From Blastocladiella emersonii ATCC 22665 (lineage: Eukaryota > Fungi > Blastocladiomycota): DNA of 64,000 bases. Of this stretch, positions 9,988-49,884 are shown one piece after another (position 1 is the first letter of the stretch; each line of letters opens with the position of its first letter). The stretch spans positions 930,001-994,000 of the forward strand of contig JANHCV010000009.1 of the NCBI GenBank assembly GCA_025594325.1, given 5' to 3'. The notes under the pieces are model-generated. The model was not told the origin of the DNA and made no database searches. It worked only from the letters and a program-made list of their open reading frames with translations. The translations under genes were made by a program, and so were the position numbers.

Positions 9988-10247
9988 TGCGGCAAGTGTC
10001 ATGTTACATTGGCTGCATGTAGTTCGTGGTTGTGGGGGAGGGACTTGCGAGCTTGATCGCGAGCTGGAATCGAATCTTCAGCGCGTCACGTTTTCCCATT
10101 TTCGCCCAACGTGATTTCGAGACGCGTGAGACGAAACTGTCTCCCTTGTTTTTGTGGGCCACACACCTCCTTGATGACACGCTCATAGGAACAACGAGGA
10201 TTATTTATGATATGCTCAAGCAACCAGCAAAACGGGTCGCTTCGCCG

Positions 10248-12509
10248 CTAGCCCTCCAAGTTCTGAAGGAACTCGACAGCCGCGTCCTTGTACTCTTGCG
10301 ACGCGATCAACTTGGGCGCGACTTGACAGATCTCCTTGATCCGTTCACGCACGCTGCCCGCCGCGGCGGAACGGGGCGCCGTTCGCATCAGCACGACCAA
10401 GTTTGCAAACCACCGCGCGCTTTTGACACCGTTGAGAGAGCCGTCGGGCACAGCGCGCCAGAATCCAAGCGAAAGATTTGACCCACCAGGGCCTCCGATC
10501 TGGTCGATCAAAAACTCGGGCTCAGCGCGGAACAGCATACGGAACACCTCAAGGAGCGGGTACTGGACCCGCTGACAAGCCGGGCTGCAGGAATTGCCGT
10601 TTGGCTGCTTGCGAAAGGCGAGTCCCAACACGAGCACTTCGTGAAGTCTGAGAAAAAGTCGTGGCGGGAGGATCTTGACGATACCAGGATAGGCAGAGAC
10701 AAACCAGCGGATGGCTGAAATGTAACACTGTTGCCCGCCAAGTTCGCAGCCGTGACAGGTTGATGTGAATCTGTTGAACTGGAGAGAGTGACGACCAGGT
10801 TGTCCGTCAAGGAGGGCTGTAATGAGAACGGCAAGGATCGGGTGTGAACAGCCGTGCTGAAATATCACGGACGCGAATCCGTTGGCAAGCTCTGGAGCGT
10901 GAATGGGCGTGATGAACACCCAAGCCAGCCCGGTACAATCCGCAGCGGCCAACATGCACACCAAGGCCACGGCCAGAGTAAGCAGCATGTCCACGGGTGA
11001 ATCTGGCAAGCTCTTAAAAACAAGTGCAACCTTTTCCTTGCGCTGGGATTGAGCTGAGAACCAATGAGCGGCCTCCATCACAAACTTGTCACGTTCGCCG
11101 ATGCCAGTCAAGTGATGATACGCGTCGCGAAGAACACGTTGCGGTTCCACAAGGTGACGATCCGAGTGGCCTACGACGCAATCCAAAAACGCTAAATCGC
11201 GAGAGGGAAGGAAAACCATCAGTATCGGTACAGAGCTGTGAAGGAGTTTGATCTTGTACCCAAGACGAGCGGGTCAACGAGATCCCCCCAGAGCCGATCA
11301 AGTACAAAGTCCGTGCTGCAAGGTGTCGGTTCAGCGTCCGATTCAAAGGATTTCAAGTAGACTTGAGCCCAAGCGGCATCGTCCAGGAAGTCGTGGGTGG
11401 GTGTCCAGCACATCGACCATGGACTCAGTGCAAGCAACTGTACCATCAGCAATGAGTGCGGCGAGATCGACGTTTGTGCAATCAAGTGACGCGCGGGCAG
11501 CCACTTCATGCTTTTCCAGGGCGTACATGAGCACTCGAGGATCCGAAAAGCGACACAGGTGGATCACGAGCGGGTATCGTCCGAACATGCGCATTGGTTG
11601 AGATAACCAGTTGTCTCCCAGAAGCATATCGAGCATGCTGCAAATGTCCGTCGCAGGGGCAAAGTTTACCAATTGATGGACCATGGCCAATGCTGTTACC
11701 ATGGCCTGCTCGCGTTGAAGCACCGGTACGACAGCCGAGGAATCAAAGCCAAGGTCGGAGATGCTCGTCAGCTGAGAAAAGACTGGGTAGTTCATGAGTA
11801 TCCCCGCGAGAAAGCCAAGAAAGTCGATGAGGCGCATCCCCGACACCCAAAGCTGGTCCGCTGGGGCAACTTGGAAAACTTTGCCCGCCGACAAAGACAG
11901 TGAAGACCATTCCTGAGTCGTCAGGGTGATTTTGAGAAGCTCAGGAATCTGTTGGTGTGCGATCAAGAGTGTTCGAAGCACGGTCGACAAGTCAAGATTT
12001 CCAGCAAAGGCGACGATCAGGAGCTGCAACATCAAGAGGGCAGCGGGGACCTGCAAGTTCGCGCTGTGAGCACCGGAGATGAGCTCCTTGATGGCGGTCT
12101 CATCGACGACAACTTTGCCCTTCCGCACGTCGCGAGAATGTCGATCGACAAGGAAACGCTGCAACTCGAGTAGCATCGACGTGATCAGGTGGTACTTTTC
12201 GGCCGACGCGTCAAGGCGGCGATGAGGATCGAGCAGCACGGATTCGAGCAGCGTCCCAAGTGCCGTTGGGAGCCTGACCAACCCAGTGTACCCAAGCGTG
12301 CTTTTAGGAACGCGTCGGAGAATCATGTCGACCCAAACGAGCTTGACGTGCCGCGAGTCGGCAGCAGTCATCACCGCTTTCGAGGCCGTGCACGCGATGA
12401 GACGAGGGCAGGCAAGCTGCAGGACGACCGTCGTGAGCTCCAAGGGGAGCGAGCTGAAACCGGCTTCGCTGGCACAAGATGCAAGAGTTTCAGGCGCGGC
12501 TGTATCCAT
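10248..12509 (-). pseudogene. F-box-like array copy 3; frameshifted by a 4-bp duplication
   Basis: FSSLPLELTTVVLQL motif. GACACCCACCCACGAC (minus strand, ~11393-11403) reads DTHDFLDD if 4 nt are removed. Intron 11192-11259; second exon ends with TAG at 10248. Confidence 0.75.
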
Positions 12510-12650
12510 TGCAGTGAGTTATAAGTTGCATGGGGTCAGTTGCTCATCACAACGGGAGCTCAGCTGCGGCGAGCTAACGCGAGGGGAGCGGACCGGCTCC
12601 GTCGCGTCGCGTGATTTCGGAACGCGTGCCTCGGCCTCGTCTCGGACCCC

Positions 12651-12750
12651 CCTATCCTGCACCACCCCCGGCTATTCTGCACCAGCCTCCTATCCTGTAC
12701 CACCCCTCCATTCTGCACCAACGCCACATCACATGATATTGAGACGCGTC
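12651..12750 (+). repeat. Left TIR of the MULE, with four CTATYCTGYACCA-like sub-repeats
   Basis: Reverse complement of 17885-17984 except C/T at 12698. Confidence 0.9.
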
Positions 12751-12984
12751 CAACTCCACGAGATGGACGCGTTCCCACGCTCCGGTCAACTCCGAACCAC
12801 ACACACAAAAAATATAATCACGTGCAAAAAAGTTCTTGCAATGATATGCACGGCTACAGAGCGTATCGGGTGAGTGAGATGCACTTCGCCGCCCGCTGCA
12901 AAGTGGAACCACGCGCCCGCTGGAAAAATCAGAGTATATACAGTCAACAGATTAACACTGAACGCGCTCTTAGCACAAATCCGA

Positions 12985-14090
12985 CTACTGCTCCTTCCGA
13001 AGAAGAGCTTGAAGGGCGCGTGCCGCCGATGTCAAGTGCACCTCCGCGTTCGCGCCGCTCGCAGCGGGTGCACGCACGGCAGCTGTAGACGCGGCCGCGG
13101 CGCTAGACGCGAGCGCCGTGCTGGGGTCCGCGGCGCTGCCCGACACGGCCGCGGCGCTTGTTGCGGCCGTCCCGCGACGCGTCCGCTTCTGCGCCGACGC
13201 TGCGTCTTTCTTGGCGGGGCGCTTCCGCTTTGCTACACGTAGAGCCAGGTTAGTTCCACACGTCCATAGCGATCGCGGCCCGCTCGTACCTTGCTTCGCG
13301 AAGTCACTCGGACAGCTCGCTGGGCGCGGCGGAGACTTGGGCGGCCGCCCAACCTTGTTGCCGTACTTTCTGGGCGGGTTCCGGACGTCGGGGAGCGCGG
13401 ATACCCGCGCTTTCTTGGCCTTGGGCGTCGCGTGCGCCACGTCGATCCCTGCGTCTTCGTAATCGTCGTCGGGCTGAGGGATCGTGCGGTCGCTGAGGTT
13501 GAGCTGCTGCTCCATGGAGGCGACCTGGTTCGCCTCGCGAACGAGCTCGAGCCCGACCGCGTCGTCCACATGTACGAGGCGAGAGTTTGTGTTGAGCCCA
13601 AACGACTTCATGAGGCCGCTAATGCCCTTGACGCGCGAGCTGGTCGTGCTGCCCGCGTGGAAGAATGTGCCAATCGCCCAGCTCGCCCACAGCCGCCGAC
13701 GCTTGTGCCAGGTACACGTCAGGTACTCGTACACGCGGTCGTCGAGATCTTGGGGTTTCTGGTTCCACAGGCGATCAAACTCCTCCTCGGTCCGCGCCTC
13801 GTGAACGTGGCGCAGGAAGTTGCGCGCGGCATTGCGCAGACCTTCGAGGAACGGCGGATCGTCAGCGTTGCGTGGTACTGCCCGGCTGGCCGCTATCGCG
13901 TATGTCTACCGCGACGTCCATGTGCCAGCGACACCCGATGCGCTGGCCGCGGAGGAAAACGGCCTCGACGGCGTTCTGCGCGGCCTGGTCGAAATCGGTG
14001 ATGACGACGAAGCCTTCGAAGTCGCGCGTGAGGTTGAGCGTCGCGTCCTTGATGAGCGTTTCCGGGTTGAGATCGAGCCCGACTGGTGCA
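12985..14090 (-). pseudogene. MULE DDE transposase remnant (C-terminal part)
   Basis: VVITDFDQAAQNAVEAVFLRGQRIGCRWHM (second Asp plus CxxH). Frameshift near 13900, then YLTCTWHKRRRLWASW...GSTTSSRVKG, with Lys where MULEs have the catalytic Glu. No N-terminal/first-Asp region found upstream. Confidence 0.8.
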
Positions 14091-16458
14091 GAGGGATCAG
14101 TCGAATTGCTGGGACTATAAATTCATCGGAAATCGCGGATCACAAATTGTGCGGCCAGCTGCAAATTTGCACTCAATTCTTGGGCCGGGTCGGGCGAGGG
14201 TCGAAATCGCAAATAAAGATTTCCGGTCAATGCAATACATGGGTGTGATGGGGGAGGTCAGGGGGATTTTTCGCTGGTGGTCGCGGTGGTCGGAGTTGCC
14301 CTTGGAGAAAGTTGGACTTTTCACCACAACGGCTCAGTCGATTGCGCTGTTCTTGACGGTGATGAACTGATCGTGGTGAGAGCTACAAAAGAGCTAATTA
14401 AGCGTTGGGGTGGTTGGAAGCCGGGTGTCAAGAAAAAAATGGCGATCGGATTCTCAACGCTAACACACCGCCAGGGTTGATTCAAGAAGCTAACCTCGAA
14501 AGTCGTTCCTGCGCAACGGAGTGAAGGATTTGACTCGCGGAAATATTTTTAGCGCTCAGAGGAGCATGGAAACGATAGACACTGTTTGAATTCATGGGGT
14601 CGCAAATCCAATACAGCATCCAATCCAGAGGGTAAACAGGCTCTCTCCTGGCGGCAAACTGGTCAACTACCTCTACCTCGGTAAATAAACTTGGTTTACC
14701 GGCCGGGATTGCAGTTTACAGAGGGCGAAACCTATGTTCGCCTGAAGGGGTTTGCGGCACGCATGCTGTTGCGGATCGCGCTCGCGGATCGAGCTTATTA
14801 GGTGGACGCCTACCGGCGCGGCAAGCCAAGCGGCTAAGGAAAGTTCGGAGTTCTCCAACAACTGTCTGAACGTGATCGCATACTGGTTTGACTCGTACAA
14901 GTTGACGAGAGCGAGCGAGTGAAGGACCGCTTCCGCTAGCACGAATGGACAACAATTGCCAGCCTCGAGTAAAGCTGGTGAGCCCTGGTACATAGCTTGC
15001 TCACAAGTCAACGCTTCTGCGGGAGCGCGCGGGACGGTCGCTCAACCACTGAAGCGCGTCCACGGCGAACCGGCACGTTGCAAATCTTTCCAGACTTGAA
15101 TGAGGTGCATGCGATCCAGTCGGTGCGCTTAAGCGCCTGGAACGCATCAAAGGCCACTTCAGAGAGTTGCGAATGGTGCTATTCCTTTGCTTGAACACAG
15201 GGTCGCGGAACGGCCATGCTCGAGCTGCCTCTGACGCTGGTAGAACATGTAACACCGCGTGATCGAGCTTCACTATCTGCCACGCGACGCTTATAGAGTT
15301 GAAACGCGACGTGAACGTTTCCAGGTTCATGGTAGAGTCATGGATCAGTAGGCAACATTCTGTTCGTCACTCAAGGGCGGGTCTCCGACTTGGCGAGCGG
15401 CCCTATCAACTAGCTGAAGCTGCCGGCGGTCAAATCAAAAGCGGACATGACTTCTGATGCGCTGGGAGCGACAGGCGCGGCTCGTCAGCGGCTGGCGGTG
15501 CCTGTGTTACGGGTTCGGCGCGGCGCTCGAATCGCGCAAGAATACATAAACTAAGCGCAATTTGGAAGAAGTCCATGTGTTTAAGACATTGCATCAAGTG
15601 GTATCTGCAGCATACGTAAACTATGCCCGGAAGGTGGAGGGAGCAACTGAGTGAGCTGTGGCAGGCGTGTGAACTCCATCGTCCGAAGCCACCGCAGGGC
15701 CATGTTGGCCACGTCCGTTCACGCTTGGCCTGCGAGCTCGTCCAGGCGCAAGATCCCCTCAAAACGCGATGAATGACCTTTGCGGCTCGCTTAAGAACCT
15801 CGCGTGAGCTGCGGTGCGATCCGGCTGCTGCGATGTGCTTGGTACTCGCTCTCGTGCGGCTGAGTTCAGCCACATCAGCAATATTCGCCTGTCGTCGCGC
15901 AGGCAAGAGAGCCGAAGGCATGAGCTCGCTCTTGGTCTGTTCGTGCGACTGTGACACGGTTATCAGACCCGGCTCGCTTCTTGGCCCCTGTTTATGAAGG
16001 AAACGGTGGGCGCTCGCTGTGGACACGAATGCGCGGGATGGAACGGCGAGGTGCGACCCCAGCAACTGTCATGACAAGGGTCTCGTCGCTTCCAAACCCT
16101 AACCAACATCTAAGCTTTGATCGACTCGAGAACAAAGGGAGTAACCGCGCGGCCGCGTCACGACCCGGAACGCGTCGTGCTTGCCCTATTCCTCCCTCCT
16201 CCCCTCGCAGTCCTGCTTTCAAGTGCGGCTTGTCGTGTTTGTCGACCGCGCGTTTCAAGGCTGGCGAAACTGAGCGAGAGTCGTGGCACGGCGGGTTGCG
16301 AGACGGGCTGCGAGACGCGTCGCGAAAACACGTGTGCGGTCACCCGCACGTGACACAGCTTGGCGTGGACTTTGCCCCGAGCGCGAGTCGGGCGAGCGAG
16401 TGACTCTCCGCCGCGCCGCGCGCGGTCCCCGTTCCCTCACTCATCGTCACTCGCTGCA

Positions 16459-17220
16459 ATGTATCACCCGTCCGCCAACGAAGCACCCTACGACCTCGAC
16501 GCACGGCAACCACGCGACCACCGTCAACAGGTACGCGTCGCATCCCGCTGCCGCGCCCCCCGCCTCGCGCTTGGCTCCCATCGCGCCGACCGTCGTGTTG
16601 CACTCCCGTGGCGGTGCGCCCGGCGTGGAGCGCTTCACCCTCTGCTCTGGCCCGCCGTCGACGCACCGCGAGCCCAGCGGCGTCGTCGCTGCCGCGCGTG
16701 CGCACCGTCGTGCGCGGGTTCCGCCGCGCTCGTCCTTCGGGCGCAGCACGGCGCAGCGCAAGGGGACCCCACCGGGCTACCAGCCGCGTGCGCGCTCGTC
16801 AAAGGTGCTGACACCTGTGCGGTGCCCATGTAGCCGCCGGCGCGCGTCCGCCGCCAGGGACTCGACATTTGCCGACTCATGGACCTGAGACCATCGAGCC
16901 AGCCTCGCTCGCGACGGTACGCCGTCTCCGCCACACCACCTCCGCGTGTCTCATGCACTCACGCTGCACGCTCGCGCCAGTAGCGCCGACAGGCTCGCTC
17001 AAGCAGTTCGGCCGCGCCCACCACGTGGGCCAAGTCCCAGTCGCAGGTACGCTTGACTCTTCTCGTCGCTACGCAAGAGTTGGCGCGCGACTGACATGCT
17101 CGCTCACATTGCTCCTCGTAGCCCCTCGTGATCCACTGGTCTCTCGCTGCACCATCGAACCGCCTCGTCTCGACGGGTTAACAACTGATGCGCAGCATCC
17201 GCAAGCTGTAGGGTGCCGAT
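16459..17220 (+). other. Putative captured multi-exon gene fragment inside the MULE
   Basis: Several GTACGC donors (e.g. ~16529, ~16917, ~17047) and CTGAC..TAG acceptors (~16808-16833, ~17093-17120) that match the host intron style, preceded by a CGCG/GAGAC-rich promoter-like stretch. Product not recognised. Confidence 0.4.
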
Positions 17221-38584: not shown

Positions 38585-39184
38585 TGCCGCGTGACGCAAA
38601 GGGGAGGACGCGAAGGGGAGCTCGCCGCTGCCCACCTGCGAGTTCGGAACTCTGGAGCACTCGAAGCGTGAAGGGAAAGCAGACGACGGAATTAAATGTA
38701 ACTCACGGCAAACACTTCGTTACGATGTCTCCGACTGTGAGCCGCGACGACGGGGGTAGTCGGCGTGGGGTGCTGGAGTCACGGCCGCGCCGGCCACGGT
38801 CACGGTGGGCTCAATGGCCGTCTGCGGGCCTCGAAACGGGTCGAAGAGACAGCGCGGAATGCAACTCGTGAGTGGGCAGCGCTGGTAGCGCGGGTAGCAA
38901 GTTCGGGTTGAGCGCGGTCAGTGGGGAGGCCACGAGGGCTCGGGGCGAGGCGCGACGGCGATTGCAGCTCGAGCGTGATGAGCGGGAGGGTGTGAGCGCC
39001 TGCGGCGAAGTCATGTTTAAGACGATCCTGAGCGATGGGAGGGAAGCTGGGAGCAGCACGTGGCGACGGCGGGCGTATAGCGGGAAGGGGCAGCTCGCGC
39101 GCGTTGCGATGATGGCGCGAGAGACGACGTGCAGGTGTTGACGCGGCGACGCGGGCAGCGGCTACGCAGCAACAACGGCGGCGG

Positions 39185-39870
39185 CAGGATGATCGCCGAC
39201 CAAGCGCCTGCGGCGAGGATTGACGTACGGAGTTGAGTGATAGTATGGTCGTCGGTTATGGTCGTCAGGATCGAGTGAAGCAATGAGATCTGGTCGTAGA
39301 GGCGCGTCGTGTTTCAGCCGCGGCCGCCACGGCACCTTGGAGACGACTGACTGTTGCAACGCGGCGCCGCACGAAACGCGCGCCTTAATACTCCAAGTAG
39401 GTAAAGGAATCATAACGAATAGCAACAGGGCCCGCAAGCGAGCACCTTGGCGGCCAGCGATCAAGGGTACGGCTATGAAGCGACGTGTCGCGCTGATCGC
39501 CTTCGCCGCGGCATGCGCCGCGGATCGTCAAAGACGGCGGAAGAGTGATCGCTGACTTTGCGCCTGCGGCGAGGATCTACGGTTGGAGTTGAGTAATGGA
39601 ATGGTCGTCGGTTATGTTCGCCAGGATCGAGTGGAGAAGAGGGACCTGGTCGCGGGGACGCGTCGTGTTTCAGCCGCGGCCGCCACGCTTCCTTGGAGAC
39701 GGCGCGGCGCTGGACGCGAAGCGCATCGCGAAAGTCCAAGGAGGGAAAGGGATCGTAACGATTAGCATCAGGGCCAGCCGCGAGTGGACTCTCTGGCGGC
39801 CGGCGACCAAGGATACGGCCGTGAAGCAACGGTCCGCGCTGTTCGCCCTCGCTTCGGCATGCGCCGAGGC
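39185..39870. repeat. Two diverged tandem copies of a ~350-bp unit
   Basis: Shared blocks gcgcctgcggcgaggat (39204/39560), cgcgtcgtgtttcagccgcggccgccacg and ggcatgcgccg. Confidence 0.8.
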
Positions 39871-40227
39871 TCAACGAACGTTTGAGCCCACGGGAAACCG
39901 CGAACTGGAGCCGCGAGAGCCGACTTGCCTCGCAGAAAAGCTGGGCGACGTCGGCGACCGTGAGATACGTACGCACGCACGCGCGACGGCAAGCACGACG
40001 ACGATTCGGAACGGCACGCACGCCATGACCCATCCAGCGCGACCAAAACCCAAACCGAACACCGTGAAGCGATCGACCTGGAGCGGCCGCCACGCGAAAA
40101 GCGACACCGAAGGCTCGTAGACGCACGTAAACGCGGGATCACGGTGCAGGGTCAACTCGCGACCGCCGAAACTCGCAGGCTGGGACCGACCGCGCGCCGT
40201 TGCGAGGGCCGACCGCGGGAACGCGCG

Positions 40228-40560
40228 CCACTCCCGCCCGCCCACATCTAAAGAGCGACCCTTGCACGGCGCCCACGTTGCATCAGCCGTAAGAAAGCAG
40301 CCGTACGCAGACCAAGAGTGTAGCGGGCCGAGGGACGGCGCGCGCTTCGCACGCGGTCGCGCTACCGCACGACGAAACGACGCGAGGGGCAAGCACTGAC
40401 CCACTCCCCGCCCACATCTAAAGAGCGACCCTTGCACGGCGCCCACGCTGCATCGCCCGCGAGAGAGCAGCCGTACGCAGACCAAAGGAGAGATCGACCG
40501 AGGGACGGCGCGCGCGCGCTTCGCGCTCGCGGTCGCGCTGACGCGCGACGAACAGACGAC
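40228..40560. repeat. Two tandem copies of a ~170-bp unit
   Basis: 41-bp identical block cccgcccacatctaaagagcgacccttgcacggcgcccacg at 40237 and 40407, plus further shared blocks. Confidence 0.85.
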
Positions 40561-40965
40561 ATCACGGCGTGACGACGAAACGGCATGTTGATCGACATGA
40601 GAGGAGATACATTGCAAGTTGCTGGGAGAGCGAGAGAGGGAGAGCGACGATCGGCAGAGAGAGAGCGCCGAGGTCGAGGGAAGCGCCGAGGTGGAGAGAA
40701 AAAACAAAAGAACGCTGGACGGTGATTGGCCGAGCACCAGGGAGCCATAGTTTAGCCAGGAAAAGCCGCTGCAAGGCGACGCCGAAGTCACGCGACTGAC
40801 CGACCAATGAAATGGCGGGACGCTCTTCAGGAGGTGGCGTGAATTGAGGGACGGCGGCTAGAGTAATTGTAGGACGAGGCGCGCTTGGCGCGGGTCAGCA
40901 CGAGCGCCCGGTGGGTGGAGATCTGAAAACGTGGGGCGACGTGGGGAACAAGTGAGCGGGATAGG

Positions 40966-41052
40966 GAGATCAAGCCGTGAGACGGTCCGCCAGCAGGCGT
41001 AGGAATTTCACCGCCCAGCGGTCCCCCAGCAGCTGCTGCCGTGCCCTAAAAA
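40966..41052 (+). repeat. Left TIR of the KDZ element
   Basis: gagatcaagccgtgagacggtccgccagcaggcgtaggaatttcaccgcccagcggtcccccagcagctgctgcc matches the reverse complement of 49172-49261. Confidence 0.8.
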
Positions 41053-41122
41053 TTCATGCTGCCTGCGCCCCTGCGCCGCCGCCCGAACCGCACGGAACCG
41101 CACCGCGACCGCAATCCCGGTT

Positions 41123-43311
41123 TTGCCGCCTGGATCGCACGCCCCCCTCCGCACGGGGGCCGCCTGTCGCGGCCCTCGAGCTCGCGTGACCTCGCTGATG
41201 CAGCCGCGCCGCCGCCGCGCCGCCGCGGCCGCCCCCGCCGCCGCTTCCACGCCCCGAGACGACGACGGCGGCGACCGTGATGCAGCGCATAGAGCTCGAC
41301 GCACGCGACTCGAGGCAACGCAACGCTCCTCCTACCCGTACCCGTACCCCACGTCCTGCTCCGCCCTCCCAGCGCCGCCGTCCCCGCCATGCCGCCTCGC
41401 CCGCTCCCCAAACCCGGTCCCAGCACCGGCAGGGCTCGAGACCGTCCCGGCAACGCGGCTGCCTCTAGAAACCGCCGCAACGAGCCCGATACTGTACGAT
41501 CCGGCCCCGTCCCACACGAATGCTTGGCTCTGCTCGTCATGCTCACACTCGTCGCCGCACTCAGATCCCTCGGCTACCACCTCGTGCCCAAGATGTACTG
41601 GCTCTGCGGCGACTTTGGCACCGGTAAGCGCGGCACGGGTCCAGCGCCGTCGCTCCTCCAGCGCAACGACGCCATCCTGCAGCGGCGCGACCTGCACGCG
41701 AGCGCGCGGCGTGGTGACCTTCTCGCGGGCGTGTCTCCCGAGGAGCTCGCCAACCCGAACGACCCCGATTTCGTCCATGACCGCCGACTCCGTGTCCAAG
41801 GACGCGAGTATCTCGGGCTGGTGGGAGCAGTACGTCAAGGGTCTCGTGCCCGGCTACGTCCTCAAGCAGGCCGCCGCGGATCCGCCGCCGGCCAAGGTGT
41901 GGACGGTGCTCGAGCTGACGGAGCGCCTGCTCGGGCTGTCGTCCGACGTTGCGCGCGTGCTCACGGCGTTCCTGTCGCGCATCCACATCCCCGCCGACAA
42001 CTTTTGCGTGTGCCCCGATCCGCCTGTCGCGCTGGACGGCGTGGTGCTTAGCACGCTCGATCGCCGTATCCCCAAGAACAAGGAGCCCTACACGGTCGTG
42101 ACGGATCTCCCGTCCAAGTACACGCGCGCGTCGCGTGCGCCCGACCACTACCTGTCCACGCACCCCGAGTTCCACGCCATGTTCCAGGCGCTCGGCAAGC
42201 ACGAGCTCGTGCTGTGGGAGCCGCTCGCCCAGCTCCAGGCCGAGGTCAAGCACCCGCTGCTCGACCTCCTCTTCCAGTTCCTGCACCACATCCCCGGCAC
42301 CGGTCCCTTCTTCCTCGCTGAGCTTCCTCGAAGCATCCCGGCCCTCGCCCAGATCGCCTTCACGCTCGGCACGATCGTCAACCCGTGTCTGCAGCTGCTC
42401 CCGCGGGCGACGTGGTCCGAGGTGCGCAAGTTCGTTGACGACAACGGCGGCCGCGCCCGTCCTGGCGGCGACGAGTTCGGCACCGAGTTCACCGCCGTGC
42501 TCGAGGAGCATGCGCCCATCATGCGTGACGTCGCGCTCCTGTCGCACGACCACGTCCCGCACCACGTCGCCGTCCAGTCGCTCTTCCGCACACCCGCCCG
42601 CTGCACCTCCGAGCAGTTCGACCAGCTGCGCCGCGACGTGTTCCGCAGCATCCTCGACGTCGCCGAGAAGACGGCCAGCACGGGCCAGGGGATCGACGGG
42701 CTCCCCTTGCCCGACGCTCCGCCCACCTCGAGCCAAGTCGACGCCGCTGCCGCCGCCGCCGCCGCCGCCTCGCTCCGCGCCGACCTCGACAAGTTTTCGG
42801 CGGGTCCTCGCGCGTTCCACCCGAAGTGGTACGCCATCGCCCTGCACGAGATGCTCAGCGCCGCCGACGTGGAAGCCACCGCGCGGCTCGCACAGCCCGA
42901 TGTGGGCAACCGCGACGCGCTCACCGAGACCGTCGCCATGCTGCGCCAGCTGCTCCCGCTCCTCCACCACGTCCTCGTCAACCTGCCGACCCCCGAGGAG
43001 GTCGTCGCCGCGTTCCAGCCGAACCGACCGCCGACCGAGCTGTCCGTCTCGCCGCTGGTCCTGCACGTCGTCAGCAAGCTCCACTCGATCCCGTACCGCT
43101 ACGCCAACCTGCTCGACTCGCTCCCGAGCCTCGACGTGCGCACCAAGTTCCTGCCGCCCGCCGACCGGTACAACCCGCTGATCCAGCCCACGGCCGCGCG
43201 CCCCGAGCTCGAGATGAAGACGCTCGCCCGTGTCGTCGCCGCGAGTCGCGGCACCCGCGGGCCTGTCGTCAAGACGTGGACGTGGTACGGCGACAACGCG
43301 CAGCTCATGGA

Positions 43312-43342
<31 letters not shown>

Positions 43343-44098
43343 TCGCGCAACGGCCGCGCCGTCCGCATCGAGCCGTACACGCCGCCGCCCGGCCACGAGC
43401 ACCACCCGCTCAAGGAGCTCGCGGCGTACGGCATGTGCTTCCCGAACCACGTGCCGATCCGCGTCACCCCCGTGCACGCCGGCGGCATGACCAAGGCCGA
43501 CTCAGCGTGCTCCAAGGAGGCCAAGGACCCGGCCACGTGCGGCGCAGGCGTGCTCGCGTGGTGGTACCTCAGCTGCCGCCGGAGCATCGGGTTCTCCATC
43601 ATGCGTCGCGCAGAAGCTCCGCACCAAGTGTACGCTACGCTGCTGAGCAGATTCCGCAAAATGCCGCCCATCCTCGTGTACGACAACGCGTGCAACGTCG
43701 CCGACTACTGCCTCGGCCGGTTCCCCGCGGCGTTCCGCGACACGCTGTTCCTCGTCGACGAGCTGCACATGCCCGGACACGTGAACTGCGCGCCGTCGTT
43801 CCGCGGCAAGCTGTACCGCGCGCTCGCTGACGTGCCGACCATCCTCCACGAGCAGAAGAACTCGCAGATCGCTGGTCTCAAGTCGATCGCGCCCAAGGCC
43901 TCGTACCCGCTCTTCTCGAACCTGCTTCTGCACCGCATCGCGATGCTGAACGAGCACGAGCTCGAGAAGGACCCCAAGTACTGGGACGCGTGCACCAGCT
44001 CGTTCACCGTCTCGCCCGTTGACGTGGAGTGGGAGGGAGGCGAGGGCGAGGTCGACGACGGTGATGATGATGAAATTGCCGATGTACATAGTGAATAA
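41123..44098 (+). CDS. KDZ-family transposase (probable cryptic frameshift near 41785; start uncertain)
   Basis: C-terminal core CSKEAKDPATCGAG...GFSIMRRAEAPHQVYATLLSRF...LVYDNACN...YCLGRFP..FRDTLFLVDELHMPGHVNC...LHEQKN matches the YDxAC / DxxHxxxHxxC / EQxN pattern of KDZ RNase H-fold transposases. Confidence 0.75.
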
Positions 44099-46222
44099 GT
44101 CGTAGGCGTAGTAGTAGAAGTAGTATACAACCCGTTTTCCTCGTCAAACTTGAAGAATATGCTGGGTGAGCGGGCGAGCGGGCGAGCGAGCGAGCTGACC
44201 GAGGCTCGAGACTTGGGCGTGAGCGGCTCGCGAAACTCGGCGGGTCGACCACCGTCTCGTCCCTCACGACTCGACGGTGAGAGCTACGACCCTGAAAGCC
44301 TGCACGAGAATTGCAAGGCTATGCTTCAACATCCTCGTTGAGTCGAATCACAAAAATCACGAGTGGAACGGCGGCACGGGCCGTTCGAGTGAGATCGAGA
44401 CGCGAGTCGCTGATCGCCACCTTCGTTTTCTCGCGCATCCTTGAGGCTCTGGCTCTCAACTCGGTGTTCAGTGAGAGCCACGGATGTGATCTAACTGGAT
44501 TGATGGTTGGCGGTGGTACTATGCCCTTAATGAGCTGAGAGCACGCTTGGGAAGCCACCCGCACCAAGTTCTCGTCCGACAAGTTGTGCGCTTGCTCCGT
44601 CGCACGGCTACGTCTTTCTGATGGTCAAATGACACTTTTTGTGCAACGACAGTGCTTTGCGATCTCTCACGCATTGTACGCGGTCGACCTGGGCCGCTAG
44701 TTGCCACCTGCGATTACTCAACGAGTTGACGTGATCCGTGAAGCTTCTCGGGCACTAATGAGTGACTGAAGGTTGTAGAAACTCGTGAAAGAGGTTGGCG
44801 CGGGCGCCCAGAGTACGGTGCACCTCAGGTACGCACGCGAGCGGAGGCGAGTGTAAGTTCACGCGTAGCTCACTGGGCGGCTCGAGCCCTGGTCTCTCCG
44901 CTCTGCATCAAGGTTTCTATGACCATATGACACTTTGGGTGCAGCGGCAGCGCTCCAACGCGTCTTGCGCGTCGGCGGGAGCGAGGCGAGCGAGCGACGT
45001 GTACCTTGCACCACCTCCAGTACCCGCAGATTTCGTCACACGGAGCTCTTCTCTCGCATATAAGCTATTCAAACCTATAGTAGACGCTGTATGGGAAGCA
45101 GGAGGGCGTCTGGTGGGGGGTGTTGTCGCGGGTCGGACACGGTCCAGGAGCGAGCACTTGGGCCGCGCTGAACAGCTCGTCCGACCACCGACCCCACCCC
45201 GGCCCCGTTCCCCTCGGTCGATTGCTCCCAAACTTGGTACAGCGGCTGTTGGGACCTATGGAAGCAACTTGGTGCCGTCGATGAGGGCCCCGACCTCATA
45301 AATGTTCGTGGCCGGGTCGGTGCACCTGGGTCAGCACTTGCTGGTCGCTCAAGTGTCCGCCGACCACCATGGACTCGTCTTTCCGAATCTCGGCTCGTCC
45401 TCTTGGAAAACTACGTTTGAGACCTGCCTGAACACGATGCCGCGCACAGTTTCCGCCCAAACCCGCCACCGTGCTCGGATCATGGTGAAGTCAGGTCAAG
45501 TTCGTTTAGCGTGGCCAAGACCGTTCCGGCCGCTCCCGCGTCCAGTTCTCCACCGATTTTGTCGACTCCGCCGCGCACAGTGGTGTAAGTGACCTGTCGA
45601 AATCGAATGGCAGTAGTCCCATGTCTACAGCTTGTCTGTAGCGGTAGATAGAGACGGAAAACCAAGTTTCCCGTATGAACGGTGTGAACGTCGCGTCCAG
45701 TTCTCGTCAGATTCTCATCCAGGATCACTCGGGCTCTCGGAAACGCTCGGCCGCGCCTCAACGGACATCTGTAGCACGCGCAAGAGCACATCGAGTGTCG
45801 CAGGTGCACCCAAGTAGACTCATACGAGTGCTACAGGCTGCTGATCGTCAATCGGACGCGTCCATGGTGTCAAGACACCTATAAAAGACATCCTGCGCGT
45901 CGAAACGTCCATTTTGAGCCGTTTGCAGCTACTACGCGTCATGGACTTGGTTGACGAGCGACGCGTTGACAGCGCCAGGACCGTGCCAGAGCGAGATTAC
46001 TGGTGTTTTACGTCATTTAACATCATATAAATTACGTACCGTTAAGAGCGGAGCATCTGCAAGATCGTGGTCTCCATCTCGAAAGTGCGCGTGATCGTCA
46101 GCTGATGCGTTTCGTCAAGCTTCGAGTGTCTACGGACGGCGCCACCGTCGCTCCATCAAGTCGTTCGCACGACCTCGCCACCACCCTGACCCGATCCGAC
46201 GACGGCCCACACCATCACCATC

Positions 46223-47478
46223 ATGAACGAGCAACCTGCTGCACCGGGCGCCAACGGTCCTGCCCGTAACGGGGCCGAGCCCGTCGTCCCGCTCTCGCCC
46301 GAGGACGCCCGCCAGCTCACCGACGCGACCGCCGCTGACTGGTTTGAAGACCTCCTGCGCCGCCCGGCTGACTGGTTTGAAGACCTCCTGCGCCGCCCGA
46401 CCCGCAACGCCAACAGCCGCAGCAGTCGATCCAGCACCAGGGCGCCGCGGGCAACAACCACCAGCAGCAGAACCAGCAGCAGAACCAGCAGTAGAACCAG
46501 CAGCAGAACCAGTCGATCCCGCGCCAGGGCGCCGCGGGCAACAACCAGCAGCAGCAGCAGAACCAGCAGAAGCAGTCGATCCAGCCAGCACCAGGGCGTC
46601 GCTGCGGGCAACGCTGCCGCGGGTGCCGCTCCGCGCATGCATCAGGGCGTCGCGGGCAACAACCACCAGCAGCGGATCCAGCCGCAGCAGTCGAGCCAGC
46701 ACCAGGGCGTCGCCGCGGGCCCGCAGCAGCGGCAGCAGCAGGAGATGGTCAACCACGCGGGCGCCGCGCCGCGCATGCCCCACGTCGCCGCGGGCGCCGG
46801 CTAGCAGCAGTACCCGCACCACACCACCGTGCAGCACCAGCAGCAGCAGCACCACCGTGCACCACCAGCAGCAGCAGCACCAGCAGCAGCACCAGCAGCA
46901 GCACCCGCACCAGCAGCAGCACCCGCACCACGCTGCCGCGGGCGCCGCCGCCGCCCAGCTCGCCAAACAGCAGCGTGCCATGGCGGAGGGCCAGATCATC
47001 GTGAGCCGCATGTCGGACGCGGAGAAGCGGGAGCTGATGGCCGTCTCCCCAAACGTGGTTCACCAATGGCGCCAGGTACGTTTCCACGAGACGGGCATGG
47101 ATCCGCGTCGTCCCCTCACCAATCCTTCCGGGGTAGAAACACTATCATCTGATGCAGCACGGCTGCAGCGAGCAGGATCGCCAGACGCTCAACTCCCTCT
47201 ACAACTCGGTGATCGCGTACGATTACCTTCAGAGCGTCTACCACGCGTGGCAGTCGCAGCAGCAGTCGCAGCTGCAGGCGCGGCAGCAGGCGCGGCAGCA
47301 GTCGCACAGCGGCCACGGCGGCCATCCACAGCACCAGCAGCACCCCCATCAAGGCCACGGTGCTGGTCACGGCCTCGGCGGTTCAGCGCCGGCTGTCCAG
47401 CGATCCGGCTCGCACGACCGTCGTTCGCCGTCGTCCTTCAGCACCCGCACGGTTTCCTCGCCCTACTCGCGCAACTAG
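46223..47478 (+). pseudogene. Gln/His-rich cargo gene inside the KDZ element, disrupted
   Basis: ATG at 46223; exact 33-bp duplication (ADWFEDLLRRP x2). The Gln-rich frame is shifted relative to the ATG; TAGs at 46492-46494 and 46802-46804. Intron 47076-47158 (GTACGT..CAG) lies within a non-repetitive ~65-aa segment. Confidence 0.6.
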
Positions 47479-47785
47479 TCGTCGACATCACGTTGCGCCC
47501 CATCCCCTCCTAGTCTTCCTTTTTTCTCTTGTGGTCGAATGTAACGAGTTGAGTGTAAAGCGTTGGTCTGTGAGTTGTGGCGGTGGTCGGCGCCATCGAT
47601 CTCAGCTCTCAAACAGCCTCAGCCCAGCTGACGAGTCCACCCTCCCCGCCTGCCCATGTATCAAATCGAACATTTCTCGACCTGCACCTCGCTCGCCGTG
47701 ACCTCCGCCGTCGCCGACATCGACTACTCGTCGCCGCCGCGCACTTATCCCGTCGCACGACTTACTCGATCCTCGCGCAACGAAC

Positions 47786-48150
47786 CCCGGCATCCACATG
47801 GCCGGTGTGCCGCGGCGGACACCGTCTTCCATCCGCCTGTGCAACGAGGCTAGCACGTTTGTGCGCCCCCGCTGCACCGCGGCCGACTCGACCCTCGCGC
47901 AGCGAAACGCACTCCGGCATCCGCATGGCCGGTGAGCCGCGGCGTCTGCCGTCCTCCATCCGCCGGTGCATCGCTGCTGCCGCGTTCGTGCTTTCCCCGC
48001 TGCACCGTGGCGGACTCGTTCGTCAATTCGCAGCTGCACGCGGCGGACACGCCCGTCCATCCGCCGGCGTACTCGGTCGCCCACGAGCCGGTGCTTTGTG
48101 GCTGCCACGGCAACACCACAACCTGCCACGTTTTTCCATCCGCCGGCTGA
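47786..48150. repeat. Diverged ~128-bp tandem repeat (2-3 units)
   Basis: cggcatccRcatggccggtg..ccgcggcg...tccatccgcc and cccgctgcaccgYgg recur at ~47788 and ~47916; partial third unit near 48040-48150. Confidence 0.6.
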
Positions 48151-49171
48151 CCATCCCCACCGCCCGGGCGACCGCCTCGTGCGCACGGATCTACGGCCCG
48201 CACCGTGACGTTCCGTTGCTGGACGCGTTGCCAGCAGCCCCTCTATCGTCCACGCGATGGTGGAGGCGGATCGGCAAGTCGCCCGCCATCTCTACGTTCG
48301 CGAGTCGTGGCGCTCTCCACACCGCGTACGCATGTTGCTACTCTATGTCGCGTCCACGGTCGTCCGAGCGCTGGTCTTGCTCTCAGTCCGTTGGCAGCGA
48401 CCTGTCGTCACAGTGGGCTTATCTTGCATCTTCCCCTTGAACGCCGGCCACGAACGCTGGTCAACTCAGTCGCCGATGCACGTTCACGGACCAGCTCCTC
48501 TGCGCGCGCGGTGCGAGGCGACGTCGAGCGACGAGAACCTCGCCGACTTGCTTACACGACGGACGCCAGAGACTTGGTCGTCGTCTCTCATCAAGCTCGC
48601 CGAGCTGCGCGAGTTTTTCGCCGCTCATTGAACTTTGATGTGGTCGACGCGACAGCGACCATCACCTTGAGCCTGTCTCTCAATCATCAAGGAGCAAAGT
48701 TTCCGCAAGTTCGTTTCGCTGGCCGCTGCCCGATGTATCGCCCTCTCACGGCTTATGAACGAGGCCATCGTTGCGGACGTTCTCAGCGGACTTGCGAAGC
48801 AGAGTCGCTCGCAGCGGACTCCGCGGAGACGGCGTGGAACGGGTCGGCAGAGTCGCGCAGCACTCAACCCCCCTGACCATGATCGTGCGACCGCACAAAC
48901 ACTGTAACGTCGAGGAACAGCAGTCGTCAGCGTCAAGTGCTGTGCGTGGAAGTTCACAAGTGGAGGTGTATGGAGTGGGCCTCGCGGGAGAGGACGTGAG
49001 CGACGCAGAGTCGCTGCGAAAAACGCTAAGTCAAGAGAACGCACACCCGTGCGTCACGATCCACGCCCACGTGCCTCGATCGTGACGAACCATGATGCAA
49101 TGTGGCGCGCGGCGTGGGCGGCGAGTCGGTTCCCAAAATGGCAACGGGTCAGGGGGGGCATGCTGAGTGCG

Positions 49172-49261
49172 TTTTTTTGGGGGCTGGCAGCAGCTGCTGA
49201 GGGACCACTGGGCGGTGAAATTTGGGACGGCTGCTGGCGGACCGTCGGACGGTCTGATCTC
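49172..49261 (-). repeat. Right TIR of the KDZ element
   Basis: Reverse complement matches 40966-41052. Confidence 0.8.
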
Positions 49262-49884
49262 GATGTAGTGAGCGGTGTTCGAGTGACCCGGCAGCGCGGT
49301 GAGTGATAAGGGAGTGACGACGGACAGAAACGAGCCAAACGACGCGGAGGACGGTCGGCAGCGGTTCTCCGGGTGATGAGGGTGAAGAGTGCCGAGGGGG
49401 AAGGGCGGAGATGGGGCGGATGAGTTGATAGGAACGCGAACTTGCATCGACTAAGCACGACGCGGATGCACCGCCGCGGCGGCGACGCACGTCTTCTTGG
49501 TGGGACCGAGCACGTCTTGGAGGTCGGTTTGTCGTCGCAGGCAAGCGTGGAGGCCGCGGACACGACTCGGACCCAGCGAGCGATGCGGCGAAGGCGGCCT
49601 CACGACTCGGGCGCCGCGGTGGCCGACGCGGTGTGGGCGACGTACGGGCAGGGCTGCATGCGATGCCGAGGGGATGGGTGCGTCGAATGCATGGTAATAG
49701 AGGGGGTCGGGCGGGGACTTGGCGGATCGGCGGGAGCGGCAGCCATCCGCGCCCAACGCGCGCGCTGAAGAAGTATCGGCAAAGAACGAAAGCGTCACGC
49801 CGTGACCTTCGCGTCCCTCGCCTCCCTCACCGCTCGACGCACCATGCAAACCCATCTTGCGACTCTATGCAACCGACCTGAAAT

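What the first reader, a model, noticed from the sequence alone, without database searches (positions are those of the whole stretch)
40952..49275. Complete KDZ-type transposon with definable TIRs, 8-9-bp TSD and ~5 kb of passenger DNA
Seen: ~88-bp imperfect TIRs, a flanking direct repeat (A)GTGAGCGG placed symmetrically, a transposase retaining the YDNAC, DxxHxxxHxxC and EQxN motifs, and ~5 kb of non-transposase cargo. Known: Zisupton elements make 8-bp TSDs; most fungal KDZ elements were recognised from protein domains, with ends much less often defined. This gives concrete termini and cargo capacity for such an element, likely in an early-diverging fungus (inference).
Basis: partly seen in the sequence, partly recalled or inferred. 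Interest (0 to 1): 0.8.

Follow-up and report, generated by a model that had tools for sequence, protein, structure and literature searches.

The report
Zisupton-like KDZ transposon in Blastocladiella
This is an 8.3-kb cut-and-paste DNA transposon of the known KDZ superfamily in the early-diverging fungus Blastocladiella emersonii, with both ends and its target-site duplication identifiable: a useful annotation, not a new kind of element.

Summary
Window 40960-49267 is bounded by imperfect inverted repeats (about 93 nt; the 87/88-nt core is 83% identical). It is flanked by the direct repeat (A)GTGAGCGG. The genome is Blastocladiella emersonii ATCC 22665.

The 991-codon ORF keeps YDNAC, DxxHxxxHxxC and EQxN. 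It does not hit Pfam PF18758 even at E=10. It is still a KDZ protein: exhaustive HMMER gives 1318 relatives. Of 40 full-length relatives, 26 carry CxC4 and 14 hit PF18758 (E<=0.01), and several pass its threshold over the same region. The model's best Swiss-Prot match is human HMGXB3, and its best solved-structure matches are DDE transposases and integrases.

Assembled contigs from the same sample add two things: an uninterrupted, empty-site-like sequence, and a near-identical copy whose flank diverges exactly at 40960.

Related Catenaria copies have about 400-bp TIRs, an 8-bp duplication and the same asymmetric outermost bases. This favours 8 bp here.

Caveats:
- No CxC4 domain is detectable in this copy.
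- The 5' coding part lies in another frame, and GenBank bridges it with a 28-nt "intron".
- Only about 1.3 kb of the 5-kb "cargo" looks coding (an orphan Gln/His-rich gene).

Complete KDZ elements with ends and extra ORFs were already published in 2024-2025. The scan noted a similar 8.3-kb element elsewhere in this genome (s1-256223).

The parts
40952..40959 (.). Left target-site duplication GTGAGCGG (9 nt if A at 40951 is counted)
   Evidence: An X2 contig follows the left flank to 40959 and then continues with sequence 23/30 identical to the right flank beyond the repeat.
40960..41052 (+). Left TIR: outermost GATAGG (not complementary to the other end), then the repeated core 40966-41052
   Evidence: An X1 contig of a near-identical copy starts matching exactly at 40960.
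41400..41772 (+). Coding-like segment in the frame of ORF 41389-42051 (GenBank exon 1 is 41593-41772); no homologs, no CxC4
   Evidence: GC by codon position 0.75/0.47/0.81 in that frame. Exon mapping. No profile hit in any frame.
41773..41800 (+). 28-nt 'intron' of the GenBank model (GT..AG). It contains the ATG at 41774 that opens the homology-supported reading frame. Likely a frameshift patch or an alternative start.
   Evidence: Intron totals of neighbouring gene models are 50 nt or more. X1-X3 contigs show no 1-2-nt indel here.
41774..44098 (+). Transposase core CDS (774 codons from ATG 41774; part of the 991-codon ORF 41123-44098; GenBank protein H9P43_007270)
   Evidence: A profile of 39 homologs matches ORF residues 219-476 and 759-950, E 4.5e-82. 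GC3 is 0.88-0.96.
43397..43972 (+). KDZ catalytic domain (RNase H-like), with YDNAC 43679-43693, DxxHxxxHxxC 43757-43789, EQKN 43850-43861
   Evidence: Model pLDDT is above 90 here. HMGXB3 match; DDE transposase and integrase matches.
44099..46222 (.). Non-coding interior. It holds an 8-bp microsatellite at 44164-44195. From about 44609 the same-sample contigs shatter and diverged variants appear.
46223..47478 (+). Orphan Gln/His-rich multi-exon gene (GenBank: two models, 73 and 228 aa), same strand as the transposase
   Evidence: Gene calls. Phase-switching codon periodicity. CAG-type repeats. No Pfam, homolog or Atlas match.
47479..49173 (.). Non-coding interior with a roughly 127-bp tandem dimer (47764-48018)
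49174..49267 (-). Right TIR. Read on the minus strand it is TACATC followed by the repeated core. It ends at 49266 if the TSD is 9 bp.
49268..49275 (.). Right target-site duplication GTGAGCGG

Best explanation
Window 40960-49267 is one insertion of a cut-and-paste DNA transposon of the Kyakuja-Dileera-Zisupton (KDZ) superfamily in Blastocladiella emersonii. It belongs to the CxC4-associated, HMGXB3-like branch whose canonical members are called Zisupton.

Proposed mechanism: an RNase H-like DDE-type transposase is encoded at 41.8-44.1 kb. It would bind the roughly 90-bp imperfect TIRs, excise the element and integrate it with a staggered cut. Repair of that cut gives a direct duplication, most likely 8 bp (GTGAGCGG); the ninth matching base would be coincidental.

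Besides the transposase the element carries about 5 kb of mostly non-coding DNA and one orphan Gln/His-rich gene.

What is shown: the ends, the duplication, the homology, the fold class, and conservation of the acidic, His and Cys motifs. There is indirect evidence for a second near-identical copy and for an uninterrupted target-like site.

What is inferred: the catalytic mechanism, the 8-bp length, current activity, and whether this copy is autonomous.
For: - Ends and duplication.
- Organism.
- Homology: 1318 phmmer hits at E<=1e-3, and 377 at E<=1e-10.
- Family labels: of 40 full-length relatives, 26 hit CxC4 and 14 hit PF18758. P0094, P0065, P0114, P0146 and P0150 pass the PF18758 gathering score over the region that aligns to the window's catalytic domain.
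- Profile: a profile of the relatives scores E 4.5e-82 on the ORF.
- Conserved residues: the Asp of DG, the Asp of YDNAC, DxxHxxxHxxC and E/Q/N are invariant or nearly so in the alignments.
- Atlas features: 0.96 to KDZ clusters.
- Fold: the best Swiss-Prot match is human HMGXB3 1019-1255, probability 1.00. The top 24 matches among solved structures are DDE transposases or retroviral integrases, Z 6.8-8.6.
- Same-sample contigs: one runs through the left flank to 40959 and then into sequence 23/30 identical to the right flank beyond the repeat. Another covers 40960-44630 with 9 substitutions and two indels, and carries 2.8 kb upstream that does not lie on this left flank.
- Catenaria relatives have about 400-bp TIRs and an 8-bp TSD (CCAAGATT). 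Their outermost heptamers are asymmetric (GATTGCA / CATGTAG), paralleling GATAGG / TACATC here. The terminal base is shared by three copies, which fixes 8 bp there.
- Literature: KDZ + CxC4 (+SWIM) is described as the canonical Zisupton architecture, with 8-bp TSDs (10.1101/2024.08.15.608186; PMC12730594).
Against: - No direct PF18758 hit, even at E=10.
- No CxC4 or SWIM domain is detectable in this copy in any frame.
- The 5' coding segment is out of frame with the core. It is joined only by a 28-nt annotated intron, so the copy may be defective.
- The literal repeat is 9 bp, and a single insertion cannot separate 8 from 9.
- The outermost 6 nt of the two ends are not complementary.
- The second copy and the empty site come from assembled contigs of the same sample. 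These are not raw reads and not an independent strain.
- No phylogeny with labelled Kyakuja, Dileera and Zisupton references could be built.
- Structural Z scores of 7-8.6 lie in the range the tool calls middling.
Confidence: 0.85

Rival explanations
1. It is the same KDZ element, but an inactive relic. The transposase gene carries a frameshift and has lost its N-terminal CxC4 DNA-binding cluster. The element can no longer move by itself, and the near-identical second copy arose by trans-mobilisation or by duplication.
For: - No CxC4 in any frame.
- Coding periodicity switches frame at about 41.77 kb. It is bridged only by a 28-nt 'intron', whereas neighbouring gene models have intron totals of 50 nt or more.
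- The two TIRs are only 83-88% identical to each other.
Against: - The 2.3-kb core ORF is uninterrupted with GC3 around 0.9, and all conserved catalytic motifs are intact.
- The second copy is about 99.7% identical, and its flank diverges exactly at the terminus.
- An ATG at 41774 sits exactly where homology begins, so an N-terminally short protein could still be made.
Confidence: 0.35
2. The duplication is genuinely 9 bp. This Blastocladiomycota lineage would then differ from Zisupton and Dileera (8 bp) and from Kyakuja (7 bp), and the two ends would be cut at positions offset by one base relative to the TIR.
For: The literal repeat is 9 nt here. It is also 9 nt at the Catenaria L004 insertion if the preceding G is counted.
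Against: - In Catenaria the extra base is the terminal base of the element in three independent copies with different flanks, so the TSD there is 8 bp.
- With 8 bp, the two ends of both elements align in register without a gap.
- One extra matching base is expected by chance in roughly 25-44% of insertions.
Confidence: 0.25
3. The 5-kb interior is not cargo carried by choice. It would be an accretion of nested or captured fragments of other repeats plus a decaying low-complexity pseudogene.
For: - Same-sample contigs shatter from 44609 onward. Diverged variants (26 differences in 200 nt) and higher summed depth appear there but not over the transposase.
- There is no codon periodicity outside 46.2-47.5 kb.
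- The Gln-rich frames contain in-frame stops.
- No homologs were found.
Against: - No internal TIR pair or nested TSD stands out.
- The interior has no match elsewhere in the window or in the paralog locus.
- Published Cryptococcus KDZ elements also carry domain-less extra ORFs (10.1101/2024.08.15.608186).
- Phase-switching periodicity at 46.2-47.5 kb looks like real exons.
Confidence: 0.4

Closest known systems
Zisupton (Bohne et al. 2012, cited from PMC12730594), including KDZx1 of Cryptococcus deneoformans (10.1101/2024.08.15.608186)
   Same: The KDZ transposase is of the CxC4-associated branch (relatives carry CxC4). It has TIRs like fish Zisupton. The TSD is most likely 8 bp. A second ORF of unknown function lies beside the transposase, and the size of several kb is comparable.
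   Different: No CxC4 or SWIM domain is detectable in this copy. KDZx1 lacks TIRs, whereas this element has about 90-bp TIRs with non-complementary outermost hexamers. The host is a blastocladiomycete. Placement in a labelled tree was not tested.
Cryptococcus neoformans KDZ1, KDZ2 and KDZ3 (10.1101/2024.08.15.608186)
   Same: They are large (9-11 kb) KDZ elements with TIRs, TSDs and additional ORFs without recognisable domains, and they are shown to transpose.
   Different: Those fall in the Dileera clade and carry CxC1. Mobility of the present element is only inferred.
Kyakuja families of Agaricomycotina (PMC12730594)
   Same: Same superfamily of transposase.
   Different: Kyakuja makes 7-bp TSDs, ends in CA..TG, has no TIRs and often carries TET/JBP. 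None of this applies here.
Human HMGXB3 (Q12766)
   Same: It is the best Swiss-Prot structural match to the catalytic domain, at residues 1019-1255 with probability 1.00. UniRef labels the Allomyces and Catenaria relatives 'HMG domain-containing protein'.
   Different: It is a host gene and no mobile element is recalled there. Only 16% identity. No HMG box was found in the window's protein.
Catenaria anguillulae PL171 element (L004:9560-17042; protein P0155/P0023)
   Same: Same phylum and same CxC4-KDZ branch (phmmer E 5e-28). It has TIRs, an 8-bp TSD, and asymmetric outermost bases beginning GAT at the transposase-proximal end.
   Different: Its TIRs are about 400 bp and it is 7.5 kb long. 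Its CxC4 is intact. There is no DNA similarity beyond short motifs. One of the two full copies (L003) lacks a matching TSD and has a 5.8-kb insertion in its right TIR.

Membership tests
KDZ superfamily | Direct match to Pfam PF18758 (KDZ transposase) | tested here: not met
   No hit at E<=0.1 for the whole ORF, and none at E<=10 for its pieces.
KDZ superfamily | Significant homology of the catalytic region to proteins that themselves pass PF18758 over the same region | tested here: met
   P0094 (E 9.7e-17), P0065 (2.6e-19), P0114, P0146 and P0150 align to ORF-fragment residues of about 534-729. They score 26.8-34.3 bits against a 26.6-bit cutoff. In all, 14 of 40 relatives hit PF18758 at E<=0.01.
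KDZ superfamily | Conserved motif set YDNAC / DxxHxxxHxxC / EQxN | tested here: met
   All three are present. They coincide with invariant or at least 90% conserved columns of the 40- and 149-sequence alignments.
KDZ superfamily | RNase H-like (DDE-type) catalytic fold | tested here: inconclusive
   The AF2 core has pLDDT above 90. The top 24 VIA matches are DDE transposases or integrases, but at Z of only 6.8-8.6. Whole-model Foldseek against PDB found nothing.
KDZ superfamily | N-terminal CxC-type cysteine cluster | tested here: not met
   Relatives carry CxC4. The window shows none in any frame. Only weak generic zinc-finger hits appear at CPRC.
Zisupton | 8-bp target-site duplication | tested here: inconclusive
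   The repeat is literally 9 nt, and 8 nt gives ends in register. The Catenaria relative is fixed at 8 bp by three copies.
Zisupton | Terminal inverted repeats | tested here: met
Zisupton | CxC4 + KDZ + SWIM domain architecture | tested here: not met
   Only the KDZ part is detectable in this copy. CxC4 is present in relatives. No SWIM was found in 40 relatives at E<=0.01.
Zisupton | Placement with labelled Zisupton references in a transposase phylogeny | not testable with these tools
   No labelled Kyakuja, Dileera or Zisupton reference sequences could be fetched, and Iyer et al. 2014 is not held.
Kyakuja | 7-bp TSD, 5'-CA..TG-3' termini, no TIRs (PMC12730594) | tested here: not met
   The repeat is 8-9 bp, the termini are GATAGG...GATGTA, and TIRs are present.

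The most novel reading that the evidence does not exclude
Blastocladiomycota KDZ elements may form a distinct lineage with end-specific, non-complementary terminal hexa/heptamers outside the TIR: GAT... at the transposase-proximal end and CATGTAG/TACATC at the distal end. These are shared by B. emersonii and Catenaria. The B. emersonii transposase would have replaced the CxC4 cluster with an unrelated N-terminal segment, joined to the core by a 28-nt micro-intron or a recoding event. That would imply asymmetric end recognition and an unusual way of expressing the transposase.
Probability: 0.12. Interest if true: 0.5.

Novelty: new member of a known kind. Interest (0 to 1): 0.3.

Why it matters
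It gives exact ends, a target duplication and the internal layout for a KDZ element in Blastocladiomycota. In the literature searched, KDZ had been reported in this phylum only as protein-domain hits in Allomyces (PMC5751038). No paper in the searched library links Blastocladiella with KDZ.

It corrects a GenBank gene model: a 28-nt intron, and two small 'genes' that lie inside a transposon. It also links these fungal elements to the HMGXB3-like branch.

It does not change what is known about how KDZ elements work. Complete, mobile KDZ elements with TIRs, TSDs and extra ORFs are already published.

Tried and rejected
- Pfam scans of the ORF and its pieces found no KDZ or CxC4.
- Word-indexed protein searches found only the GenBank protein itself. 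They therefore gave no route to the second copy.
- A search with the cargo ORF found nothing, not even the annotated product. The Atlas search of the same region was also blank.
- The B. emersonii paralog P0002 (39-48% identity) was fetched in the hope that it was the second element. It has no TIRs and shares only about 175 nt of catalytic-core DNA.
- The Allomyces locus of P0007 has no inverted repeats at all.
- No paralog of the insertion site exists in the window.
- tblastx of the cargo against the paralog locus and the rest of the window found nothing meaningful.
- Pfam on flanking ORFs found nothing.
- Whole-model Foldseek against PDB was uninformative because of the long, floppy helical middle. 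The PDB sequence profile search gave only noise.
- Iyer et al. 2014 could not be read.
- I first took a weak BLASTP alignment of CPRC... to the CxC4 of P0002 as evidence that the long ORF is coding upstream of 41774. Codon-position GC contradicts this, and I dropped it.
- Copy number from contig word depth was considered. It was not used quantitatively, because the tool warns against it.
Full report
**1. Observation**

The inverted repeats are real. The repeat finder gives two blocks: 40966-41000 with 49227-49261 (35 nt, 86%), and 41004-41052 with 49174-49222 (49 nt, 88%). blastn joins them into one 88-column match at 83% identity, E 2e-18. Two TIR sub-motifs each occur exactly twice in the window, once per end, against 0.12 and 0.00 expected.

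The direct repeat AGTGAGCGG lies at 40951-40959 and 49267-49275. Shuffling the 30-nt flanks produces a repeat of 9 nt or more in 0.55% of trials, and of 8 nt or more in 2.1%.

The ORF 41123-44098 (991 codons) contains YDNAC, DELHMPGHVNC and HEQKN.

**2. Organism and annotation**

The ORF is 100% identical to GenBank protein H9P43_007270 of Blastocladiella emersonii ATCC 22665 (825 aa; contig JANHCV010000009.1).

**3. Family of the transposase**

Pfam gives no PF18758 hit, even at E=10.

An exhaustive phmmer search, however, finds 1318 relatives at E<=1e-3, and 377 at E<=1e-10.
- Of 40 full-length relatives, 26 carry CxC4 (PF18717) and 14 hit PF18758.
- The nearest relatives hit PF18758 only below threshold.
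- P0094, P0065, P0114, P0146 and P0150 pass the gathering score over exactly the region that aligns with the window's protein.
- A profile of 39 relatives scores E 4.5e-82 on the ORF, in two blocks: residues 219-476 and 759-950.
- The invariant or near-invariant columns are the Asp of a DG motif, the YDNAC Asp, D-x2-H-x3-H-x2-C, and E/Q/N.
- Atlas features point the same way (0.96 to KDZ clusters).

So the protein is a divergent KDZ transposase of the CxC4-associated branch. Huang et al. call KDZ + CxC4 + SWIM the canonical Zisupton architecture (10.1101/2024.08.15.608186).

**4. Fold**

An AlphaFold2 model from 149 sequences has mean pLDDT 69. Residues 10-110 and 540-735 are mostly above 90.

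The only meaningful Swiss-Prot match is human HMGXB3, residues 1019-1255, probability 1.00. This fits the 'HMG domain-containing protein' labels of the Allomyces and Catenaria relatives.

Against solved structures, the top 24 VIA matches are DDE transposases and retroviral integrases (ISCth4, PFV/RSV/HIV integrases, TnsB, Mu, Tn5, Hermes, IstA), at Z 6.8-8.6. The scores are middling but the class is uniform. I take an RNase H-like DDE mechanism as likely, not proven.

**5. Gene structure**

GC by codon position shows strong coding periodicity in the long-ORF frame from about 41.78 to 44.1 kb (GC3 0.88-0.96). From about 41.4 to 41.77 kb the coding-like pattern lies in the frame of ORF 41389-42051.

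The GenBank model joins the two frames by an 'intron' of only 28 nt (41773-41800). Neighbouring gene models have intron totals of 50 nt or more. The same-sample contigs show no small indel there, so this is not an assembly error.

Homology to relatives begins at ORF residue 219, directly after an ATG at 41774. No CxC4 is detectable in any frame.

Two readings remain: a frameshifted gene, or a protein starting at 41774 that lacks the usual zinc cluster.

**6. Ends, empty site and second copy**

Logan contigs of three runs from the same sample were laid on 39900-45899.

- An X2 contig matches the left flank up to 40959. It then continues with 30 letters that are 23/30 identical to the window's right flank immediately after the repeat. 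This is an uninterrupted, target-like site with a single copy of the repeat. Because the flanks are repetitive in this genome, it is probably a paralog rather than an allele.
- An X1 contig of 6499 nt covers 40960-44630 with 9 substitutions, a 19-nt deletion in the TIR, and one extra unit of the 8-bp microsatellite at 44164-44195. Its first 2839 nt do not lie on this left flank. The simplest reading is a second copy, about 99.7% identical, at another locus, whose homology starts exactly at 40960.

The scan independently noted an 8.35-kb element of this type on another contig (s1-256223). I could not fetch it.

**7. TSD length and end architecture**

Two copies over 90% identical in Catenaria anguillulae (L003, L004) and a rearranged third (L005) define a 7.5-kb relative with about 400-bp TIRs.

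At L004 the element (9560-17042) is flanked by CCAAGATT on both sides. A ninth matching G is the terminal base of the element in all three copies despite different flanks, so the TSD there is 8 bp.

Both species share the same end design. The outermost 6-7 nt are not complementary: GATTGCA and CATGTAG in Catenaria, GATAGG and TACATC here. The TIR proper follows in register.

In B. emersonii the register holds only if the TSD is the 8-bp GTGAGCGG and the element is 40960-49267. I therefore favour 8 bp, at about 3:1. This matches Zisupton and Dileera, and differs from Kyakuja, which has 7 bp, CA..TG termini and no TIRs (PMC12730594).

One caveat: the L003 copy has no matching TSD and carries a 5.8-kb insertion in its right TIR.

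**8. The 5-kb interior**

Pfam finds nothing in its ORFs. Only 46.2-47.5 kb shows codon periodicity, with phase switches typical of exons. This is the CAG-rich Gln/His-rich gene that GenBank splits into 73-aa and 228-aa models. No homolog was found.

The rest is non-coding. From 44609 onward the same-sample contigs break into 200-260-nt pieces with diverged variants and higher summed depth. At least 44.6-45.9 kb is therefore repeated elsewhere in the genome.

No nested TIR pair is evident. There is no similarity to the paralog locus or to the rest of the window.

'Cargo' is thus an orphan gene plus non-coding and repetitive DNA. This is comparable to the domain-less extra ORFs of Cryptococcus KDZ elements (10.1101/2024.08.15.608186).

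**9. Comparison and novelty**

KDZ domains were already reported in Allomyces (PMC5751038). Complete KDZ elements with TIRs, TSDs and additional ORFs have been described, and some have been shown to move (10.1101/2024.08.15.608186; PMC12730594). No paper in the searched library links Blastocladiella with KDZ.

This is a new member of a known kind. It is a well-delimited, probably recently duplicated Zisupton-like element in a blastocladiomycete. Its minor oddities are the missing CxC4, the two-frame 5' end and the asymmetric outermost bases.

**10. Limits**

- There is no labelled phylogeny.
- There was no access to the rest of the genome.
- The read evidence is from assembled contigs of the same sample, covers the left 6 kb only, and includes no RNA data.

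Noticed in passing
window 41773-41800: The GenBank model of H9P43_007270 uses a 28-nt GT..AG 'intron' to join two reading frames. Neighbouring models have intron totals of 50 nt or more. It is probably an annotation patch over a frameshift.
   Followed up: partly
window 44609-45899: Same-sample contigs fragment into pieces of about 200 nt here, with a variant about 13% diverged and raised summed depth. The transposase region does not show this. This part of the interior belongs to a repeat that is present elsewhere in the genome.
   Followed up: partly
window 40100-40900: The left flank of the insertion has 2-5 times the contig word depth of the element and many variant contigs, so the element sits in repetitive DNA. 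Tandem dimers lie at 39173-39872 and 40228-40558.
   Followed up: partly
L002:10001-13366: A second B. emersonii KDZ/CxC4 gene (H9P43_001428, 892 aa, 39-48% identical) lies among ordinary genes. It has no TIRs, so it may be a relic or a domesticated copy.
   Followed up: partly
L003:16747-22583: The Catenaria copy L003 has a roughly 5.8-kb insertion inside its right TIR, and its two outer flanks show no matching TSD. Possible causes are a nested element or recombination between copies.
   Followed up: no
window 40981-40996 and L004 about 9595-9612: The TIRs of the B. emersonii and Catenaria elements share a short motif, AGACGG-N-C-N2-3-CCAG. It could be a conserved transposase-binding site or chance.
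   Followed up: no
L006:10001-11803: The Allomyces macrogynus relative (600 aa, CxC4) has no inverted repeats within 10 kb on either side.
   Followed up: partly
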